From IMG/VR virus record IMGVR_UViG_3300020380_000001, positions 186,001-250,000 of that record: DNA of 64,000 nt. One strand, given 5' to 3'. Both the position numbers and the translations under genes were made by a program. Numbering within the stretch: the first letter of the stretch is position 1; each line of letters opens with the position of its first letter. Shown piece by piece: positions 3,501 to 57,583 of this stretch. Under the pieces are notes generated by a model. It did no database searches and was not told the DNA's origin. It saw only the letters and a list, made by a program, of their open reading frames with translations.

Positions 3501-3597
3501 TGGTACCAGGTACGGGATTCGAACCCGCAGGGTCATTATTACAGACCGCGACAAACACTTTAATGATGCCGCGCCTTCCCATTCGGCGCAACCTAGT
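3501..3597 (-). ncRNA. tRNA-like RNA with degenerate anticodon arm (apparent TTA anticodon)
   Basis: 7-bp acceptor, CGCC/GGCG D stem, canonical T arm, A-CCA; weak GGCAT/GTGTT stem around CATTAAA; extra GGTC/GACC arm. Confidence 0.65.
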
Positions 3598-3895: not shown

Positions 3896-3970
3896 TGGTA
3901 GGTTAGGTGAGTATCGAACTCACTACAACTGATTTGTAAGAACAGCGCCTCACCTGTCGGCCTCTAACCT
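3896..3970 (-). tRNA. trnV: tRNA-Val(TAC)
   Basis: AGGTTAG/CTAACCT acceptor, CTTACAA loop with one stem mismatch, CCA. Confidence 0.8.
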
Positions 3971-5053: not shown

Positions 5054-5132
5054 TGGTTGCAAGGGCGGGATTTGAACCCGCGTCCGCTAGGGTTATGAGC
5101 CCTGCCATCTGCCAGACTGATTGTACCTTACT
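5054..5132 (-). tRNA. initiator-like tRNA-Met(CAT)
   Basis: 1:72 mismatch, GGG-CTCATAA-CCC, canonical T arm, CCA. Confidence 0.85.
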
Positions 5133-8153: not shown

Positions 8154-8239
8154 GCACAGCGGACGGGTTTCGAACCCGCAATGCGATATTCGCGCTGCCT
8201 TGAAAGGGCAGTGACTTTACCAGTTTGTCCACCGCTGTG
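8154..8239 (-). tRNA. trnE: tRNA-Glu(TTC) with long variable arm, no encoded CCA
   Basis: CTGCC-CTTTCAA-GGCAG arm; 15-nt V region CGCGAATATCGCATT. Confidence 0.85.
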
Positions 8240-9508: not shown

Positions 9509-9600
9509 AATTTGCTACCTTGTGTTTGTTTAATCAACCTACACAGATATAATAGCAAAATGACATCCAAACACAAGGCCTTTTTGAAAATAATTTCAAA
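9506..9600 (-). repeat. promoter-leader cassette, copy 2
   Basis: See 8051..8141. Confidence 0.85.
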
Positions 9601-9685
9601 AATATTTCGTTGCTCTGGGTACTTATATTAGTCGCTTTTAAACTCATGTGTTTATCATCTCGCAAAATGGCAAACATATAAGTTT

Positions 9686-9770
9686 TGGTGGGTTGGGTGG
9701 GATTCGAACCCACGAAGCATTACGCGCTAGATTAAAAGTCTAGTATCTTTAACCACTCGATCACCAACCC
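9686..9770 (-). tRNA. trnK: tRNA-Lys(TTT) on a class II (Tyr-like) body
   Basis: CTAGA-CTTTTAA-TCTAG arm; 13-nt V region CGCGTAATGCTTC; A73-CCA. Confidence 0.88.
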
Positions 9771-9803
9771 ATATCGTTTTCGTACTTTCGTCTTTCGTTT
9801 CAT
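9732..9803 (-). CDS. Lys/Arg-rich 23-aa leader ORF running into tRNA-Lys
   Basis: AGGAGA RBS + MKRKTKVRKRYGLVIEWLKILDF; the stop is the TAA in the anticodon loop. Confidence 0.4.
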   Translation of the reverse strand: MKRKTKVRKRYGLVIEWLKILDF

Positions 9804-9838
9804 TTTCTTTCTCCTGTTAATTATACGAGTGTAGTATG

Positions 9839-9912
9839 CAGGGACGACGGGACTTGAACCCGCGCTCTCCGCAGTGACAGTGCGATATTTTAACCAACTA
9901 AACTACGCCCCT
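9839..9912 (-). tRNA. trnD: tRNA-Asp(GTC), no encoded CCA, flanked by a 13-bp inverted repeat
   Basis: CGCA-CTGTCAC-TGCG arm; flanks 9827..9839 and 9913..9925 are perfectly complementary. Confidence 0.88.
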
Positions 9913-9936
9913 GCATACTACACTCATATCTTTATT

Positions 9937-10488
9937 TTAATATAACGAGTCTTCTACGATTTCAAACAAGTCATTATACATAGCTGAAGCCATTGCATTA
10001 AACTCGTCGTAAGCGCCATCAGCAAAAAAATCACTATACAACATATGTGCATCGCCTTTATTGTCACGTACTGACTTTGACACGTACTGTAACGAGCGAG
10101 GCTTAAAGTGCGACATCTTTTGCAATCTAGGTTCCGGCGGGAAAGCACGCATTTCAATATCAATTGAGTCATCGCCTTCCTGATAAAACACTAACATTTT
10201 AAGAACTGTATTCGCGTTCCAGTTAGTTTTTATCGGCTTAAACTTGATAGTGAAGCCTTCTTTACCAGCTTGAGGAACATCGTCGCCTTGTAGTACGTCG
10301 ACACCCATATCAGCAATCTCATCTAACCAAGTGTTCATACCACTAACGATTTGTTCACGGAACTTGCTGTATTGTTCTCTGAATCCGGCAGCGTCGCTTT
10401 CCATTAATCTGAAAACCTTTTCCATACCGGAATTTTGTCCTGTTTTTTTCCCTTCAAGGATTTTGTTAACTCGATTTCGGTCAGCCAT
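9937..10488 (-). CDS. protein with variant shared N-terminal peptide
   Basis: MADRNRVNKILEG...MEKVFRLMES; ATAAATAG upstream. Confidence 0.75.
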   Translation of the reverse strand: MADRNRVNKILEGKKTGQNSGMEKVFRLMESDAAGFREQYSKFREQIVSGMNTWLDEIADMGVDVLQGDDVPQAGKEGFTIKFKPIKTNWNANTVLKMLVFYQEGDDSIDIEMRAFPPEPRLQKMSHFKPRSLQYVSKSVRDNKGDAHMLYSDFFADGAYDEFNAMASAMYNDLFEIVEDSLY

Positions 10489-10566
10489 GTTTAGTATTCT
10501 CCTGTTATCCGTTATCGTTACTATTTATCCAATAACTTAAGAGCGTACAAAACCAATAACCAAAAT

Positions 10567-10658
10567 TGGCGGACGGTGCTGGATTTGAACCAGCGCGGGG
10601 GATATTCTCCACCTCCGGGTTAACAGCCCGGCGCAATCGGCCACTATGCGAACCGCCC
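10567..10658 (-). tRNA. trnN: tRNA-Asn(GTT) on a class II (Ser-like) body
   Basis: CCGGG-CTGTTAA-CCCGG arm; 20-nt V region; G73-CCA; G3:U70 pair. Confidence 0.88.
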
Positions 10659-10758: not shown

Positions 10759-10833
10759 TGGTGCCGAGTGGTGGTACCGCCCCACCCTCTAAGGATTTTC
10801 AATCCATCGCTAATCTGTCTCAGCTAACTCGGC
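10759..10833 (-). tRNA. trnF: tRNA-Phe(GAA), non-canonical T and D loops
   Basis: GCCGAGT/ACTCGGC acceptor; TTGAAAA loop; T-loop GGCGGTA. Confidence 0.85.
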
Positions 10834-11012: not shown

Positions 11013-11131
11013 CCAGAATGCACTTTCGTACATACTGGGTTCTGTTTTAACGCTAGAACCAGCGTTTAGACCAGATATAAGTTTATATCCAAATTGTTAA
11101 AGAACGTTTCGACTCCTACGGAGTCCAGGCA

Positions 11132-11159
11132 TAAAAAAAGCAGCCTGTTGGCTGCCTTT
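11132..11159 (-). terminator. intrinsic terminator
   Basis: GCAGCC-loop-GGCTGC hairpin followed by a U-tract on the minus strand. Confidence 0.7.
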
Positions 11160-11182
11160 ATGCTTTTCAATTTCGTACGAGG

Positions 11183-11440
11183 TTAGATAATCTCTTTCTC
11201 GTCTAATTGCATAAAGGCAGTGTTAAAATCTTGATACTCTGGTTTATGATTCGTTTGATTATTATCATCCGACGCAATTCCAGATTCACGGATACTTCTT
11301 GTCGCGTTTACCGGAGCATACGATTTTTCGTTGCTTGGCATGATAAACGTTTCTTCACTACGTGGAATTTCAGCTACAACTACGCGTGGTGGCGTAATGT
11401 CGCTTAATTCTTTTGTTGATGTAGTAATAAATGTTGCCAT
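11183..11440 (-). CDS. hypothetical protein
   Basis: 85-aa ORF, GAGGA RBS, CTAAATAA upstream. Confidence 0.7.
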   Translation of the reverse strand: MATFITTSTKELSDITPPRVVVAEIPRSEETFIMPSNEKSYAPVNATRSIRESGIASDDNNQTNHKPEYQDFNTAFMQLDEKEII

Positions 11441-11618
11441 TGTATCCTCGATTAATATTCAATAGGAACCGTAGTTCCTTGCTATAGTTTTATTTAGCAC
11501 CGTAAAACCATTTTTTACGGCAGCTAGTAATAAAACAGGCTAGTTTTTTAAAACGCCAATGTTTTTTAAAAAATTGCTGTTCCTAGCCTAAGTCATTTGT
11601 TTTAAAAACTTGATGTCT

Positions 11619-11646
11619 ATTATACATGCTTTTAAAACGTTGTCAA
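11619..11646 (-). promoter_or_regulatory. consensus sigma70 promoter
   Basis: TTGACA-16-TATAAT with an upstream A-tract. Confidence 0.8.
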
Positions 11647-11669
11647 GAACTTTTTTCAACTTTCTTGAC

Positions 11670-12185
11670 TTTAATAAGTCGGGTTGCTTTTACTAGTATC
11701 GAATTATGAGTTCGAGTTTTCGTAAAGTTTTGCTGTTAGCAACCCATAATAGATATACACCGTGATGCACATGTATTATGAGTAAAAATAGCAGCGAACT
11801 ATCCAAAGGGTTGGGAGTTCTCCAGATAGTCGCTACCCAAGAGAGTGGATGAACACTCTAGACAAACAAAATAAGTCGGGCTACATTATCTAAAGTCAAA
11901 TTAAAAGTTTGATGATCGATAATATTGCTGTTAGTAGCCCATAATAGATATACACCGTGATGCACATGTATTATGAGTTCTAACATTACACCCGGTTTTG
12001 GGACCTAAACTGCCGTACTCCCGGGGTAACATTAAAAATTAACGCCGTATCCAAATATATGCGTTCAGGTCAAATCGGATAAAAATCACCTACTAACACA
12101 TAAAAAGAACTTTGTTAAACTGGATGCATTAAGTACTGGTTTGATTAGAAGTCAAAAGTAATTAAATGTTGCTGTTAGCATCCAA
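11670..12185 (-). ncRNA. candidate large structured ncRNA with three TAACAGCAA motif units
   Basis: No ORF; continuous hairpins; three motif copies with compensatory stem changes; own promoter at 12235..12262. Confidence 0.6.
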
Positions 12186-12234
12186 AACTTTTTAGCTTTA
12201 CGGAAACTTTTGTTTCCCTAACGCTGTCTTATCT

Positions 12235-12262
12235 ATTATACTTCATTTGATCGCTGTGTCTA
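12235..12262 (-). promoter_or_regulatory. sigma70-like promoter
   Basis: TAGACA-16-TATAAT with an upstream A-tract. Confidence 0.7.
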
Positions 12263-12312
12263 GAACTTTTTTAATTTTTTTCAAATTAATTTTCTAACCA
12301 ACAATCTTTTTA

Positions 12313-12597
12313 AGTGCTAGGGGCCGAAGCCCCTATCTCAGCACTGTGAGATCAGATGATATTATACTAGCGTAGTTCACAGGATTGTCTTCACCGGAAG
12401 GTCCCACGAAAAACATTTTCAATATCCGGGCAAGGTAAAAGCAGCAACCAAATTATGCAAAGGTATATAGCTAACTCCCGCGGATCCTCTCACTGCTGGT
12501 GTTACTTCGCCACCAAACGATAACTAGACTAATATAGTTACCGACCCAGCTAGGCGTCTATGATGCAGGCTGTACTCTCGACAGCCGTCACTAAAAT
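12313..12597 (-). ncRNA. candidate structured RNA or 3' UTR
   Basis: ORF-free; several hairpins including GGGGC-TTCG-GCCCC and a possible pseudoknot. Confidence 0.4.
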
Positions 12598-12930
12598 CTA
12601 GCTAGGTTCAACTACGTCTGGTCGCACGTAAATGTCAATCGGCGATGCGTCACCGTACATACACCACTCACCACCAAACAAATAAATTCCGGTTAAGTCG
12701 TTTCCGACTGGCTTGCCATCAATACTTAATGGCTTTACTTTTACAGTTAAATGCTTTGCTTCAAGACTGGTTATGTTTTCACAACCATGTGCCTTAGCAA
12801 CTTCCGATACAGACGAGTAACTCTCGCCTTTACACTCAATTGAGTCAACGAACCATAGTGCGTGATCTGTTTCGCCTTTAAATGCTACTAAGATCGTATC
12901 GTTCTTAACAATCTTTTGCTGTATAGTCAT
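12598..12930 (-). CDS. hypothetical early protein
   Basis: 110-aa ORF; TAGACA/TATAGA promoter at about 12963-12993. Confidence 0.7.
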   Translation of the reverse strand: MTIQQKIVKNDTILVAFKGETDHALWFVDSIECKGESYSSVSEVAKAHGCENITSLEAKHLTVKVKPLSIDGKPVGNDLTGIYLFGGEWCMYGDASPIDIYVRPDVVEPS

Positions 12931-13010
12931 TGTTGCGCCTTGTTTGTTTTGTGTTTACGTAATCTATACTAACACCAAATTAGTAGTTGTCTACAAGTTT
13001 TTTCAACTTT

Positions 13011-13496
13011 TCACCAAACACGCGTACCATACGAAAACCGGCTTCGTAGATACTGTACTATCAAGCGGGGCGCAGGTATAAAAGAGTTAACTGGGATGAT
13101 TTTCATCGTATCTGATTGCGGAATATCCCAAAAATCCTGATAGTTGTTTTGACCATCAAAATATATTGAACGTTCAGAGCCTACTATCCGTAAATGAAAG
13201 CTATGCACTCCCACAAACTCATAACTATCAACCGAAGTGCGATACTTTTTTGTGTCGCGTGCTAGTATTTTTATACGATGTAAGCCTTCCAGCACAGCAC
13301 GTACTGACTGGGACAGGCCTGCAGACGATATTTCCACGTTGCCCATTATTACTTGCTTAAGTAACTCTTCATCATCTGTGCAATAGTAGTACCCTGAATT
13401 TGGTATAAGGCATTCAGAATTTACGATATGTATATTATCGTATGTTACTTTGACCTTTTTGAACAATAGCGCGTCGGATGGTATCGAAAGATCCAT
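13011..13496 (-). CDS. hypothetical protein
   Basis: Track ORF 13011..13589; start uncertain because it overlaps the nucleotidyltransferase. Confidence 0.55.
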   Translation of the reverse strand: MDLSIPSDALLFKKVKVTYDNIHIVNSECLIPNSGYYYCTDDEELLKQVIMGNVEISSAGLSQSVRAVLEGLHRIKILARDTKKYRTSVDSYEFVGVHSFHLRIVGSERSIYFDGQNNYQDFWDIPQSDTMKIIPVNSFIPAPRLIVQYLRSRFSYGTRVW

Positions 13497-55785: not shown

Positions 55786-56429
55786 CGTCTATCCTTACTT
55801 TTTCTAACCAATGTGAGTATGGTATCAGATATATCCCTAAATGGCTGGATTATATCATGCTGAGCAATATCCGGGTTATTGTATCGCGCAACTAACGCGT
55901 AATACTTACGGTACAATTCATACATTTCGTTCCAGTCATCACACAAACGAAGATATTCTTCGCGAAATTCGGAATCAGTTTTGCTGCGGATGAATCCAGT
56001 TATGTTGGATTCATTAGTGACGTTCATATCCAACATCGGCCAGTTATCTGATCCAGTACGTATACCGGCAGCGTCTAGGAAGTCTAGATACTCATGTAAC
56101 AAGCGAATACTGGCTGAAGTGTCTAACACCTTAATGCCATGTACTTTGCGATACAGGGTTTCACTGAACGCGATAATTTGATCATCACTGTTAATCGGCG
56201 CGTCTTCTGTTTCAGATTCTGAGTAGCGCTGTATAACTTTTTGATCAACAAGGTTCGCGGCAAGCATGGCTGGATCACCAACAGTCGGTGCGCCCATTGG
56301 CGACAGTATAGACATTAGTCTACAAAAATAAGGACACTCGCTGTGGTCATTTGTGTTGAACATAACAACACGTTCACTAGCCAACGCTTTGAGGTTAGCT
56401 TCGATATATTCATCCGGATCTAAAATCAT
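55782..56429 (-). CDS. hypothetical protein
   Basis: 215-aa acidic ORF, coupled. Confidence 0.75.
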   Translation of the reverse strand: MILDPDEYIEANLKALASERVVMFNTNDHSECPYFCRLMSILSPMGAPTVGDPAMLAANLVDQKVIQRYSESETEDAPINSDDQIIAFSETLYRKVHGIKVLDTSASIRLLHEYLDFLDAAGIRTGSDNWPMLDMNVTNESNITGFIRSKTDSEFREEYLRLCDDWNEMYELYRKYYALVARYNNPDIAQHDIIQPFRDISDTILTLVRKSKDRR

Positions 56430-56932
56430 TTGCTATACTCCACACATGTATGGTCTAATCCGACCAAGTATGTATCAATAATAAATTCGACTATTCGCCA
56501 ATCACCGCCAGCCAAGCCGCACCCGATTTGCGGGTATGCGACTCGTATTGGTGGTAGACCGTTTGCTTCGCGTTCAGCGGCAGAGTCGCGTAAATCATTA
56601 CCCAACTCTCTAAAGAAATCAACCAAAGCAGTGTAGTCGACAGGGCAGTCTTCAGGCGAAGTTCGCGGGGCGTACTGGGTGTAAGCATTAAGGACAACAA
56701 ACTCGTGATCGTTTATCGTTAACACCGCAGACGAAAAGCTGCCTAGCTTAGAACGATCACCTTTTTTAGTCTGTTCTTTATCAGCTTGCGGCACTGCTTG
56801 CCAGCCAGGTCGTCGTGCTATTTGCCCTGCTATACCGGAGCCCATCGCATGCAGACAATTACAGCCGTGAACCATAATGTCGAACTGCGCGTTCTCCATC
56901 ATCTCGAGTAAATCACCTTTAACTTTTTTCAT
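56426..56932 (-). CDS. macrodomain ADP-ribosylhydrolase (DarG/TARG1-like)
   Basis: KGDLL, HGCNCLHAMGSGIA, YPQIGCGLAGGDW motifs. Confidence 0.88.
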   Translation of the reverse strand: MKKVKGDLLEMMENAQFDIMVHGCNCLHAMGSGIAGQIARRPGWQAVPQADKEQTKKGDRSKLGSFSSAVLTINDHEFVVLNAYTQYAPRTSPEDCPVDYTALVDFFRELGNDLRDSAAEREANGLPPIRVAYPQIGCGLAGGDWRIVEFIIDTYLVGLDHTCVEYSK

Positions 56933-57191
56933 ACTTCACCTTTTCTAAGTACGCTTCGTACTCAATTTCATCTATATAGACAAATACACTGCCGTCTTGT
57001 ACAGCAAGACCAAAGTCAGCCAAGTTGTCGGCTACACTATGTTGTAATTCGTCTCCGCCCCATATCAACGCAACTAAGTAGGCTTTAAACCACAAGAAGC
57101 GTTCTTCGGAGTCGTTAATCCACAGCCATACAAAGGCTTCAGTAATACTGAGCTCGTCGTATTTCTTGACTGTCTGCGTCTTCTTACTCAT
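56919..57191 (-). CDS. hypothetical protein
   Basis: Coupled 90-aa ORF. Confidence 0.65.
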   Translation of the reverse strand: MSKKTQTVKKYDELSITEAFVWLWINDSEERFLWFKAYLVALIWGGDELQHSVADNLADFGLAVQDGSVFVYIDEIEYEAYLEKVKYEKS

Positions 57192-57583
57192 GGCACGTAC
57201 ATTGTATCAACTGTAAACCCGCACTCGTTACTCAACGTGGCAAGAAACTCAACAAGCATAGGATCCAACAATTCATCAGCTGTGGCTGGCACAACCATTG
57301 TTTCACCGCTAATTGTTTCTTCTTTGCCAAGGTAAACACCAACGATAAACGGCGGCTCACCGAAATGTCTCCCTTCAACTTTTAAGTCAGTAACGAACAA
57401 ACGTTCGCCAGCGCACAAGTTGTGAGACAGGTATAAACTGATGGTGTTGCGGAGCTCAGACATGTTTGGTTTTATCTCAGTCACTTCACGCAAATACTCA
57501 GTTGAGTACTTATTCTTTTTAACAATTTTAGCTGACATTGCTTTCCCCTTTGTAACGCCATACAACACGCGTATCGCGGTCAT
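57188..57583 (-). CDS. hypothetical protein
   Basis: Coupled ORF; likely start MSAKIVKK. Confidence 0.6.
   Translation of the reverse strand: MTAIRVLYGVTKGKAMSAKIVKKNKYSTEYLREVTEIKPNMSELRNTISLYLSHNLCAGERLFVTDLKVEGRHFGEPPFIVGVYLGKEETISGETMVVPATADELLDPMLVEFLATLSNECGFTVDTMYVP

What the first reader, a model, noticed from the sequence alone, without database searches (positions are those of the whole stretch)
11670..12185. Candidate large structured ncRNA with three covarying TAACAGCAA units beside the tRNA array
Seen (minus strand): an ORF-free stretch of about 520 nt downstream of a TAGACA-16-TATAAT promoter. Three units read GGGTTGC-TAACAGCAA-[variable hairpin]-GCAACCC-GACT, GGGCTAC-TAACAGCAA-[..]-GTAGCCC-GACT and GGATGC-TAACAGCAA-[..]-GCATCC-AGTT. 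The stem sequence changes while pairing is kept, and the unpaired TAACAGCAA is invariant. Two units are preceded by an identical 40-nt CATAATA/TATTATG hairpin (11745-11783 and 11940-11978). The gaps hold further hairpins (AGCGAACTATC/GATAGTCGCT, AGAGTG/CACTCT, TTACACCCGG/CCGGGGTAA, TATCC/GGATA). Established: large phage ncRNAs such as GOLLD and ROOL often sit next to tRNA clusters. I do not recognise this one as either. Inference: a multivalent protein-binding or sponge RNA, or a set of processed small RNAs.
Basis: partly seen in the sequence, partly recalled or inferred. Interest (0 to 1): 0.75.

Follow-up and report, generated by a model that had tools for sequence, protein, structure and literature searches.

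The report
Phage Y-RNA-like anticodon-mimic small RNAs
The three repeated TAACAGCAA hairpins (plus a fourth nearby) are real and belong to a large, so far uncatalogued family of small phage RNAs that travel with a Ro60-like ring protein, so they are most likely this phage's Y RNAs, each showing a mimic of a tRNA anticodon arm.

Summary
There are four units on the minus strand, not three: A 12186-12118, B 11942-11875, C 11747-11678 and D 11591-11534. They lie behind two near-consensus sigma-70 promoters.

Each unit has a helix made by its own 5' and 3' ends. On the 5' side sits a bulge with invariant ACAGCAA. In A-C the apical arm is a 5-bp stem with a 7-nt loop that reads like an anticodon loop (Arg-UCU, Lys-UUU, CAU).

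This is not one large GOLLD/ROOL-like RNA. A covariance model built only from units of other phages finds exactly these four in the 306.5-kb genome (E 4.5e-9 to 2.9e-5).

The family is widespread and has no Rfam match. In dozens of phage contigs, and in cultured Listeria, Mycobacterium and E. coli phages, the units lie beside a DUF2828+vWA gene. My model of this phage's copy matches Ro60 over its full length. The same helix+ACAGCAA module, circularly permuted, is inserted in the anticodon stem of many phage tRNA genes.

Best reading: Y-RNA-like partners of the phage Ro60-like protein, a new variant of a known kind. Binding, processing and function are inferred, not shown.

The parts
12235..12262 (-). 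Promoter P1 (TAGACA-16-TATAAT) that would drive units A, B and C
   Evidence: 11 of 12 consensus positions. The region 12232-12279 is 73% identical to the P2 region (D2).
12118..12186 (-). Unit A. Terminal helix TTGGATGC/GCATCCAG (12185-12178 with 12127-12120). ACAGCAA at 12175-12169. Apical stem TTTGA/TCAAA with loop CTTCTAA (12151-12145), like an Arg-UCU anticodon loop.
   Evidence: for the sequence. R1 score 51.6 bits, E 4.5e-9. Identical in the 98% relative.
11938..11978 (-). Repeated hairpin CATAATACA...TGTATATCTATTATG directly before unit B. Its role is unknown; it may be a processing or stabilising hairpin.
   Evidence: D1 (54-nt repeat, 96% identical); fold.
11875..11942 (-). Unit B. 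Helix TGGGCTAC/GTAGCCCG, TAACAGCAA, middle stem ATTATC/GATAAT. Apical stem TCAAA/TTTGA with loop CTTTTAA, like a Lys-UUU anticodon loop.
   Evidence: 42.9 bits, E 4.5e-7; identical in the relative.
11743..11783 (-). Second copy of the repeated hairpin, directly before unit C
   Evidence: D1.
11678..11747 (-). Unit C. Helix TGGGTTGCT/AGCAACCCG, ACAGCAA, middle stem TTTAC/GTAAA. Apical stem TCGAA/TTCGA with loop CTCATAA, like a CAU (Met/Ile2) anticodon loop.
   Evidence: 36.9 bits, E 1e-5. In the relative, five substitutions cluster in the apical hairpin; the loop becomes CTCATCC and the stem lengthens to 6 bp.
11619..11646 (-). Promoter P2 (TTGACA-16-TATAAT, 12 of 12) before unit D and the 85-aa ORF
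11534..11591 (-). Unit D. Helix TAGGCTAG/CTAGCCTG, GA-ACAGCAA, and a 10-bp A/U stem with a 10-nt loop. This loop is not anticodon-like.
   Evidence: 35.0 bits, E 2.9e-5. The relative carries a +T/+A pair of insertions that lengthens the stem by one pair.
11985..12117 (-). Spacer between A and B with two further hairpins (TATCC...GGATA; TTACCCCGG...CCGGGTGTAA). They are not part of the family model and their role is unknown.
   Evidence: fold. The relative's substitutions fall in the loops.
11784..11874 (-). Spacer between B and C with hairpins AGAGTG/CACTCT and AGCGACTATC/GATAGTTCGCT. Their role is unknown.
   Evidence: fold.

Best explanation
The stretch encodes an array of four small Y-RNA-like RNAs of about 58-70 nt. 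They are transcribed from two strong sigma-70-type promoters and presumably cut out of the two precursors.

**Structure of each RNA.** The 5' and 3' ends pair into a terminal helix. On the 5' strand, directly after that helix, sits an unpaired ACAGCAA in a fixed register. This is the layout of a Y RNA: a 5'-3' stem with a conserved motif in a bulge.

**Proposed partner.** I propose that the helix plus bulge is the docking site for the phage's Ro60-like ring protein. That protein is a DUF2828 + DUF7788/vWA protein of PHROG 850, encoded at genome positions 55,820-57,271, which is outside the window.

**Variable arm.** In units A-C the apical arm copies a tRNA anticodon stem-loop (Arg-UCU, Lys-UUU, CAU). 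It would act as the second module, as in other Y RNAs. It could tether the ring to factors that read anticodon loops, or it could act as a decoy for them. Candidates are host anticodon nucleases, synthetases, modification enzymes and the ribosome.

**Shown:**
- Membership of the units in the RNA family, and covariation of its helices.
- Genomic linkage of the family to the protein family.
- Ro60 fold of the protein model.

**Inferred:**
- Direct binding of the RNA to the protein.
- Processing of the precursors.
- What the anticodon arm is for.
For: **1. Family membership.** Model R1 was built from 33 units of other phages. It finds units A-D at 51.6, 42.9, 36.9 and 35.0 bits. Nothing else in the 306.5-kb genome scores below E 0.8.

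**2. Structure.**
- Both helices covary. In the seed alignment 87.5% of cells pair, against 60.5% when shuffled and 33-43% when slid. There are 110 double-change cells against 32.
- In 77 hits, 94% of cells pair and there are 269 double-change cells against 72.
- A test that does not select on the 3' strand: 26% of all ACAGCAA have a fixed-register 6-bp partner downstream, against 4-9% for control 7-mers. G-R-Y at positions -7 to -5 occurs in 37% against about 5%.

**3. Anticodon mimicry.** Of 102 units, 78 have an apical 7-nt-loop hairpin, against 46.8 +/- 4.8 in shuffles. Of those loops, 41% fit Y-U-NNN-R against 9% +/- 4%. Lys-UUU and Asn-GUU are the commonest.

**4. Linkage to the protein.**
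- 38 of about 122 loci fetched by an RNA pattern alone carry a DUF2828 gene in the few kb held. The motifs lie almost wholly on the gene's strand, and a unit usually lies just before the start codon.
- 28 of 36 large records encode the protein, and 17 of 19 that are at least 90% complete do so. The rate in GenBank phages is 710 of 50,697.
- This phage encodes it.

**5. Protein fold.** The AlphaFold model (pLDDT 79) has Ro60 proteins as its 13 best PDB matches over the full length. These include Thermus phage phiLo Ro60 (E 3.7e-9, TM 0.6), D. radiodurans Rsr, and Xenopus and human Ro60. PHROG 850 is named 'RNA-binding protein'.

**6. Cultured phages.**
- Listeria phage LMSP-25 has three tandem units in the gap just upstream of the gene.
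- Mycobacterium phage MsGreen has three just downstream.
- E. coli FelixO1-like phage D4 has several in the tRNA array after the gene.

**7. Literature.**
- Y RNAs lie within 4 kb of Ro60 genes on the same strand and carry a conserved 5'-strand motif plus a tRNA-like module (PMC4201824).
- The phiLo Yrl RNAs have a 5'-3' stem flanking a bulge with the motif (PMC12135203).
- In the P100-like Listeria phage CKA15, three very abundant unannotated RNAs lie within 2 kb upstream of the Rsr-like gene (PMC12282133).

**8. Transcription here.** Marine metatranscriptome contigs cover 11094-11749 and 12016-13046 but not 9600-10535.
Against: - No binding data exist for any member of this family. The one complex prediction I requested was not folded.
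- In this phage the Ro60-like gene is about 141 kb from the units, so the defining 'within 4 kb' linkage holds for the family but not for this locus.
- The conserved motif ACAGCAA is not the GNCGAAN0-1G / GGUCCGA motif of known Y RNAs, and no Rfam Y-RNA model matches.
- The Ro60-like gene usually sits beside tRNA arrays. Part of the adjacency could therefore reflect shared placement rather than partnership.
- The RNA evidence consists of assembled contigs from RNA libraries. These may contain DNA, and they give no transcript ends.
- Unit D and about a quarter of family members lack an anticodon-like loop. In the 98% relative, the loop of unit C has C at position 37, which no tRNA has.
Confidence: 0.68

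Rival explanations
1. These are free-standing anticodon-arm decoys or sponges that work without the Ro60-like protein. The units would soak up host anticodon nucleases or other tRNA-directed defence enzymes. On this view the helix plus ACAGCAA is only a stabilising or processing scaffold, and the linkage to DUF2828 reflects shared placement in the tRNA region.
For: - The apical loops copy anticodon loops far more often than chance, with Lys-UUU and Asn-GUU dominant.
- In this genome the units sit at the head of the tRNA array, 141 kb from the DUF2828 gene.
- Phage tRNAs are known to counter tRNA-cleaving defences (general knowledge; see also PMC13096335 for Septu and tRNA-Tyr).
Against: - A mere scaffold would not need an invariant single-stranded 7-mer in a fixed register with sequence-conserved helix pairs.
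- MsGreen has no tRNA array at the site, only one tRNA gene 1.2 kb upstream, yet it has three units directly after the Ro-like gene.
- 17 of 19 near-complete genomes with the module encode the protein.
- Some units, D among them, have no anticodon-like loop.
Confidence: 0.13
2. This is one large multi-domain structured RNA of about 520-700 nt, comparable to ROOL or GOLLD. The units would be repeated domains of a single functional molecule.
For: - Units A-C lie behind one promoter with structured spacers, and the whole stretch folds with z = -6.3.
- Metatranscriptome contigs run across unit boundaries.
- ROOL occurs in the same kind of neighbourhood in another phage (L113).
Against: - There is no Rfam match.
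- In other phages the units occur alone, in other numbers, or inside tRNA genes.
- I did not see the spacer hairpins or the 41-nt hairpin in the other phages' units, though I made no dedicated search for them.
- Promoter P2 separates unit D.
Confidence: 0.05
3. These are remnants or free copies of an intron-like or mobile module that targets tRNA anticodon stems. The stand-alone units would be by-products of its spread rather than functional RNAs.
For: - The same helix+ACAGCAA module is inserted at position 28/29 of many phage tRNA genes.
- Rfam's tRNA model spans those genes at 117-141 nt.
- 'Enigmatic introns' have been reported in Lak phage tRNAs (10.1101/356790).
- Units B and C arose by local duplication.
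Against: - The stand-alone units keep covarying helices across unrelated phages.
- They are driven by consensus promoters.
- A and B are invariant among strain variants whose flanks differ.
- The phage has no RtcB or tRNA-splicing endonuclease.
- The module carries no coding capacity and no known ribozyme core.
Confidence: 0.07
4. These are degenerate or minimal (armless) tRNAs, or tRNA pseudogenes.
For: - A 7-8 bp terminal helix plus a 5-bp/7-nt anticodon-like arm.
- Location in a tRNA array.
- Length of about 68 nt.
Against: - There is no D arm, T arm or CCA, and neither ARAGORN nor the Rfam tRNA model calls them.
- The terminal helix has its own conserved sequence (U.G closing pair; G-A-Y), unlike acceptor stems.
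- The phage already has normal tRNAs with the same anticodons.
Confidence: 0.04

Closest known systems
Bacterial and phage Y RNAs of the YrlA type (Chen et al. 2014, PMC4201824) and Yrl1/Yrl2 of Thermus phage phiLo (PMC12135203)
   Same: - Small non-coding RNAs encoded next to a Ro60-type gene on the same strand, often several in a row.
- The 5' and 3' ends pair into a stem with a conserved motif on the 5' strand or in a bulge.
- A second module mimics part of a tRNA.
- The protein partner here has the Ro60 fold.
   Different: - The motif is ACAGCAA, not GNCGAAN0-1G or CGAA.
- The tRNA part copied is the anticodon arm, with many anticodon identities, rather than the T and D arms.
- The partner is the DUF2828/DUF7788 branch, which the TROVE Pfam model does not detect in this genome. 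The 2014 survey, which started from TROVE-annotated genomes, would therefore have skipped these phages.
- The module also occurs circularly permuted inside real tRNA genes.
- No binding has been shown.
Metazoan Y RNAs bound by Ro60
   Same: Terminal stem from the two RNA ends, a conserved protein-binding motif on the 5' strand, and a variable effector loop. The function is as a tether or gate for the Ro60 ring (PMC4201824; PMC12135203).
   Different: There is no sequence similarity and no Rfam Y_RNA match. The context is bacterial sigma-70 transcription in a phage tRNA array.
ROOL and GOLLD large phage RNAs
   Same: Found beside tRNA clusters in large phages. A ROOL lies a few hundred bases from family units in another phage (L113).
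   Different: Those are single RNAs of about 580-800 nt with their own Rfam models. Here nothing matches them, and the functional unit is about 60-70 nt.
'Enigmatic' tRNA introns of Lak megaphages (10.1101/356790)
   Same: Insertions of tens of bases in the tRNA genes of large phages, conserved in sequence, with no known splicing route.
   Different: I could not test whether the Lak insertions carry ACAGCAA, because no supplement is held. The window's units are stand-alone, not insertions.
Abundant unannotated RNAs upstream of the Rsr-like gene of Listeria phage CKA15 (PMC12282133), and the Bas63 gp130 Ro60-like protein (PMC11482910)
   Same: Same protein family by its distribution: Listeria P100-like and FelixO1-like phages are among the homologues. 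Same placement. I find three family units exactly in that gap in the related phage LMSP-25. The authors guessed at Y RNAs.
   Different: Those papers define no motif, structure or family. I did not check that their transcript coordinates coincide with the units.

Membership tests
ACAGCAA hairpin family (defined here; model R1) | Terminal helix of the 5' and 3' ends, followed in fixed register by unpaired ACAGCAA on the 5' strand | tested here: met
   All four units score 35-52 bits with a model trained on other phages only. Consensus register.
ACAGCAA hairpin family (defined here; model R1) | Apical hairpin with a 7-nt anticodon-like loop (Y-U-NNN-R) | tested here: met
   Units A, B and C: CTTCTAA, CTTTTAA, CTCATAA on 5-bp stems. 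Unit D does not have it. In the family, 41% of apical loops fit against 9% in shuffles.
Y RNA (partner of Ro60) | Bound by a Ro60-family protein | not testable with these tools
   The complex prediction was not folded. This needs pull-down, CLIP or EMSA.
Y RNA (partner of Ro60) | The genome encodes a Ro60-family protein | tested here: met
   DUF2828+DUF7788 protein at genome 55,820-57,271. The model matches Ro60 structures over the full length. The TROVE Pfam model itself gives no hit.
Y RNA (partner of Ro60) | Encoded within about 4 kb of the Ro60 gene on the same strand (criterion of PMC4201824) | tested here: not met
   Here the gene lies about 141 kb away, on the + strand of the record while the units are on the - strand. 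The criterion is met for the family elsewhere: 38 loci, and LMSP-25, MsGreen and D4.
Y RNA (partner of Ro60) | Stem formed by the 5' and 3' ends with a conserved motif on the 5' strand or in a bulge | tested here: met
YrlA subfamily of bacterial Y RNAs | GNCGAAN0-1G motif near the 5' end, and a tRNA-like domain with T and D arms | tested here: not met
   No unit contains GNCGAA(N)G and none has a T or D arm. No Rfam family matches at E up to 10.
tRNA | Cloverleaf with D and T arms, recognised by tRNA models | tested here: not met
   ARAGORN and Rfam RF00005 tRNAs in the window, but none at 11534-12186.
ROOL / GOLLD | Match to Rfam RF03087 or RF01998 | tested here: not met
   No match at gathering score or at E up to 10. 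The same scan finds a true ROOL in L113.

The most novel reading that the evidence does not exclude
A divergent Ro60 branch (DUF2828) has a dedicated RNA handle, the helix plus ACAGCAA. Large phages use this handle in two ways: on free mini-RNAs that display spare anticodon arms, and as an extra arm built into their own tRNAs at position 28/29.

This would mean that the 'enigmatic introns' of phage tRNA genes are not introns at all but docking sites for a Ro-like ring. The ring would guard, check or decoy anticodon arms during the contest with host tRNA-cleaving defences. That is a tRNA-centred RNP system not yet described.
Probability: 0.3. Interest if true: 0.85.

Novelty: new variant of a known kind. 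Interest (0 to 1): 0.72.

Why it matters
**An RNA partner for a common phage protein.** Ro60-like proteins are common in phages. I found 710 GenBank records with a homologue, including FelixO1-like, P100-like, Twort-like, Campylobacter phages and mycobacteriophages. Their RNA partners are unknown outside the TROVE-annotated minority. A defined motif, structure and model for the partner RNA makes the system testable in cultured phages. In one of them the protein is already reported to counter a defence system (Bas63 gp130 against Ppl, PMC11482910). In another it is reported to be packed in virions beside very abundant unexplained RNAs (CKA15, PMC12282133).

**Oversized phage tRNA genes.** The finding also offers a concrete explanation for the many oversized tRNA genes of large phages.

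**A link to the tRNA-cleavage arms race.** Because the RNAs display anticodon arms, mostly Lys and Asn, the finding ties Ro/Y biology to that contest.

**Annotation.** The RNAs are currently invisible to Rfam. They are sometimes overlaid by spurious small ORFs or called 'tRNA-OTHER'.

Tried and rejected
- **Rfam.** I scanned at gathering score and at E up to 10 and found nothing at the units. The weak Phe_leader and sRNA hits are the terminator and chance.
- **GenBank phage DNA.** Both near and distant searches with the 1-kb region found no match. tblastn of the neighbouring 110-aa ORF also found none.
- **tmRNA-like tag idea.** I read from the GCA in ACA|GCA. The frames end at inconsistent places and the peptides have no tag-like ends, so I dropped it.
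- **Hfq (ARN)n site.** The invariant C's at the 'N' positions argue for more specific recognition.
- **Pairing of ACAGCAA with the capped-helix loop (UGU) or with RNase P RNA.** At most 3-6 bp, and not conserved.
- **Archaeal-type bulge-helix-bulge intron.** The ends of the insertions are A-rich on both sides and cannot pair.
- **RtcB and tRNA-splicing endonuclease.** Both are absent from this phage.
- **ARAGORN on all deletion variants of the interrupted tRNAs.** It was too permissive to place the insertion, so I replaced it with an explicit cloverleaf parse.
- **Neighbouring ORFs.** Those of 85, 110 and 192 aa have no Pfam or PHROG match. The 207-aa ORF is a cytidylyltransferase-like protein with no evident link.
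- **Protein-RNA complex prediction.** The tool does not fold this kind of complex, so it gives no evidence either way.
- **Lak phage intron sequences.** No supplement is held.
Full report
**1. What is in the sequence**

- Unit A: TTGGATGC-TA-ACAGCAA-...-GCATCCAG.
- Unit B: TGGGCTAC-TA-ACAGCAA-...-GTAGCCCG.
- Unit C: TGGGTTGCT-A-ACAGCAA-...-AGCAACCCG.

A TAGACA-16-TATAAT promoter lies at 12262-12235. The hairpin before B and C is part of a 54-nt direct repeat, 11730-11783 and 11925-11978, 96% identical. No ORF longer than 42 aa overlaps the stretch. The 576 nt fold better than every one of 100 shuffles, z = -6.3.

- A fourth unit, D, reads TAGGCTAG-GA-ACAGCAA-...-CTAGCCTG at 11591-11534. It lies behind a perfect TTGACA-16-TATAAT promoter at 11646-11619. 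The two promoter regions are themselves duplicates (D2).
- In A, B and C the apical hairpin is a 5-bp stem with a 7-nt loop. The loops read CTTCTAA, CTTTTAA and CTCATAA, which are the anticodon loops of tRNA-Arg(UCU), tRNA-Lys(UUU) and a CAU tRNA.

**2. Context**

The window is bases 186,001-250,000 of a complete 306.5-kb phage genome with terminal repeats, 43% G+C. The genome comes from marine metagenomes. The units sit at the upstream end of a minus-strand array of about 20 tRNA genes.

Rfam has nothing for the units at gathering score or at E up to 10. GenBank phages have no similar DNA.

One IMG/VR contig of 310 kb is 98% identical across the region.
- Units A and B are unchanged in it.
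- Unit D carries a paired +T/+A insertion that lengthens its stem by one base pair.
- Unit C has five substitutions, all in its apical hairpin.

**3. The units belong to a large family**

A pattern scan of IMG/VR aimed at the units turned up unrelated phage contigs in which TAACAGCAA lay inside tRNA-like genes and in neighbouring hairpins.

A second scan used ACAGCAA, then 20-45 nt, then GGTTCGANTCC.

In these loci ACAGCAA occurs 536 times. Control permutations of the 7-mer occur 96-245 times.
- 37% of the ACAGCAA copies carry G-R-Y at positions -7 to -5, against about 5% for controls.
- 26% have a 6-bp partner for positions -9 to -4 within 18-80 nt downstream, against 4-9% for controls.

The consensus is 5'-U-W-R-G-A-Y-N-C-(N)-N-ACAGCAA ... 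G-N-R-U-C-Y-W-G-3', with a U.G closing pair.

Of 102 units chosen only by motif plus stem, 78 have an apical hairpin with a 7-nt loop. Shuffles give 46.8 +/- 4.8. Of those loops, 41% fit the anticodon-loop rule Y-U-NNN-R, against 9% +/- 4% in shuffles. CTTTTAA (Lys) and CTGTTAA (Asn) are the commonest.

**4. Independent test on the window**

I aligned 33 units from other phages, leaving out this phage and its near-identical relative. RNAalifold recovered the terminal helix, with compensatory changes at all six pairs.

With the apical stem added:
- 87.5% of cells pair, against 60.5% when shuffled and 33-43% when the partner is slid.
- There are 110 double-change cells against 32.

The covariance model R1 built from this alignment finds the four units as follows:

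| Unit | Coordinates | Bits | E-value |
|---|---|---|---|
| A | 12186-12118 | 51.6 | 4.5e-9 |
| B | 11942-11875 | 42.9 | 4.5e-7 |
| C | 11747-11678 | 36.9 | 1e-5 |
| D | 11591-11534 | 35.0 | 2.9e-5 |

In the whole genome the next hit has E 0.8.

Over 841 kb of loci there are 77 hits at E up to 0.001. In their alignment 94% of cells pair, with 269 double-change cells against 72. That alignment is fitted to the model, so it leans towards the structure. The seed units were chosen for having a stem, so the counts share that bias.

**5. The same module inside tRNA genes**

I parsed the hits as cloverleaves. In the clearest cases a stretch of 40-54 nt is inserted in the 5' strand of the anticodon stem, most often between positions 28 and 29 (15 of 36 parses). 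The affected tRNAs include Lys, Asn, Thr, Pro, Ser, Arg, Asp and Val. Rfam's tRNA model spans these genes at 117-141 nt.

The insert has this form: an A-rich linker, a capped helix, 1-3 nt, ACAGCAA, then a U/A-rich linker.

The strand of the capped helix next to ACAGCAA has the sequence of the 5' strand of the stand-alone units. For example, AAGACAC-NN-ACAGCAA appears in both forms. The insert is therefore a circular permutation of the stand-alone module, and the tRNA body takes the place of the apical arm.

This phage has one such chimera outside the window, near genome position 169,384 on the minus strand. Whether the insert is removed or stays in the mature tRNA is unknown. The phage has no RtcB and no tRNA-splicing endonuclease.

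**6. The protein link**

In two of the first loci, the ORF right after the units began ...FT.TENGA... This is a DUF2828 protein with a vWA domain.

- **Adjacency.** tblastn shows such a gene in 38 of about 122 loci that had been fetched by the RNA pattern alone. The motifs there are almost all on the gene's strand. In more than half of the loci an ACAGCAA unit lies within a few tens of bases of the estimated start.
- **Genome-level co-occurrence.** Of 36 large records with the tRNA-embedded module, 28 encode DUF2828. Of the 19 that are at least 90% complete, 17 do. Among GenBank phages the rate is 710 of 50,697.
- **This phage.** It encodes one at 55,820-57,271: DUF2828 + DUF7788/vWA, PHROG 850 'RNA-binding protein'.

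An AlphaFold model made from a 19-sequence alignment (pLDDT 79) has Ro60 proteins as its 13 best PDB matches over the full length:
- Thermus phage phiLo Ro60 (E 3.7e-9, TM about 0.6).
- D. radiodurans Rsr.
- Xenopus and human Ro60.

The TROVE Pfam model itself does not hit the genome. This is probably why these phages escaped the 2014 Y-RNA survey, which started from TROVE annotations (PMC4201824).

**7. Cultured phages**

Model R1 and direct scans find units next to the gene in three cultured phages.
- **Listeria phage LMSP-25.** Three tandem units at L172 3105-3372 fill the gap just upstream of the 'RNA-binding protein'. A 'tRNA splicing ligase' gene lies 1.3 kb further on.
- **Mycobacterium phage MsGreen.** Three units lie just after the 'Ro-like RNA binding protein'. 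One of them has loop CTGCTAA.
- **E. coli FelixO1-like phage vB_EcoM_D4.** Several units lie in the tRNA array after the gene.

Published work fits this picture.
- In the P100-like phage CKA15, three very abundant unannotated RNAs lie within 2 kb upstream of the Rsr-like CKA15_055. They are driven by consensus sigma-A promoters, and the protein is found in virions. The authors could only suggest Y RNAs (PMC12282133).
- In Bas63, the Ro60-like gp130 lies beside the tRNA genes and counters the Ppl defence. The authors guessed that some 'tRNA genes' are Y RNAs (PMC11482910).

Neither paper defines a motif or a structure. I found no paper that mentions DUF2828 in phages.

**8. Transcription here**

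Four marine metatranscriptome assemblies contain contigs 95-99% identical to 11094-11749 (unit D, P2, most of C) and to 12016-13046 (unit A and upstream). None covers 9600-10535.

The gap at 11750-12015 is bounded by the two copies of the repeat, which is where an assembler breaks. This is weak support only. The libraries may hold DNA, and contigs give no transcript ends.

**9. Interpretation**

Known Y RNAs have three features (PMC4201824; PMC12135203):
- a stem made by the two RNA ends;
- a conserved motif on its 5' strand or in a bulge, which Ro60 reads;
- a second module, tRNA-like in bacteria, that tethers the ring to another factor.

The window's units have the first two features, with a different motif: ACAGCAA instead of GNCGAAN0-1G. 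Their tRNA-like part is the anticodon arm.

I therefore read them as the Y-RNA-like partners of this phage's Ro60-like protein. They are made as two precursors and probably processed.

What the anticodon arm does is inference. It may be a tether or a decoy for proteins that read anticodon loops. Host anticodon nucleases are the most attractive candidates, given the dominance of Lys and Asn arms and the known role of phage tRNAs in that conflict.

Points against:
- No binding data exist, and the complex prediction was not run.
- In this phage the gene is 141 kb away.
- The motif differs from all known Y RNAs.
- Ro-like genes tend to sit beside tRNA arrays anyway.

**10. Rivals**

- **Ro-independent decoys.** Cannot be excluded, but they do not explain the invariant motif in fixed register or the MsGreen locus.
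- **One large RNA.** Contradicted by the modular occurrence of the units elsewhere.
- **Intron or mobile-element remnants.** These do not explain the promoters, the covariation or the invariance of units A and B.
- **Minimal tRNAs.** The units fail every tRNA test.

**11. Verdict**

The interpretation 'large structured ncRNA' should be replaced by 'array of four Y-RNA-like small RNAs with anticodon-arm mimics'.

The kind (Ro60 plus Y RNA in phages) is known. This subclass, its motif, its anticodon mimicry and its embedding in tRNA genes appear to be undescribed. They are directly testable in cultured phages.

Noticed in passing
Own genome, outside the window: about G000:C1:169,300-169,470 (minus strand): A tRNA-like gene with a D arm and a GGTTCGATTCC T loop. 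Its anticodon region is replaced by a capped helix (GAATACT/AGTATTC) + TA + ACAGCAA + a small hairpin. It is the only tRNA-embedded copy of the module in this phage, and ARAGORN does not call it.
   Followed up: partly
window 9686-9770, 8154-8238, 10567-10658 (minus strand): The phage's tRNA-Lys(UUU), tRNA-Glu(UUC) and tRNA-Asn(GUU) are 85-92 nt long, with long variable arms. This is unusual for these class I tRNAs and may bear on evasion of tRNA-directed defences.
   Followed up: no
window 3501-3597 (minus strand); L004 7478-7572: A 97-nt tRNA with anticodon UUA, which would read the ochre stop codon. It has a long extra arm and lies between two tRNA-Ser genes. ARAGORN calls the homologous gene in the 98% relative tRNA-Pro(CGG), 95 nt.
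   Followed up: no
window 3899-3970, 5057-5132, 10762-10833 (minus strand): Three tRNA genes found by the Rfam model but missed by ARAGORN.
   Followed up: no
window 11743-11783 and 11938-11978: The 41-nt hairpin that precedes units B and C is identical in both copies. Its loop begins TGTG, like the loops of the capped helices in the tRNA-embedded modules. Its role is unexplained; it could be a processing site, a 5' stabiliser, or a relic of a capped helix.
   Followed up: partly
L113 5852-6477 and 187-276: A full ROOL RNA (323 bits) lies among tRNAs and ACAGCAA units in another large phage. A partial OLE-like hit just above threshold lies nearby.
   Followed up: no
L172 (Listeria phage LMSP-25) 2836-7504: The gene order is: ribosome-associated inhibitor-like ORF, three units, Ro-like gene, and then a 'tRNA splicing ligase' (RtcB) 1.3 kb further on. 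This recalls the bacterial rsr-yrlA-rtcBA operon.
   Followed up: no
L165 (Vibrio phage 6E35-1b) 3919-3964: A short ACAGCAA hairpin (GACATT-AT-ACAGCAA-...-AATGTC) spans the ribosome-binding site and start codon of the Ro-like gene. This hints that the protein may also regulate its own mRNA.
   Followed up: no
L143 5271-6806 (minus strand): The DUF2828 homologue there has three in-frame stop codons. This suggests a phage with a recoded stop codon.
   Followed up: no
window 11131-11233 (minus strand): A weak Phe_leader-like Rfam hit (27 bits against a gathering score of 55). It is simply the GC-rich terminator hairpin plus U run after the 85-aa ORF.
   Followed up: yes
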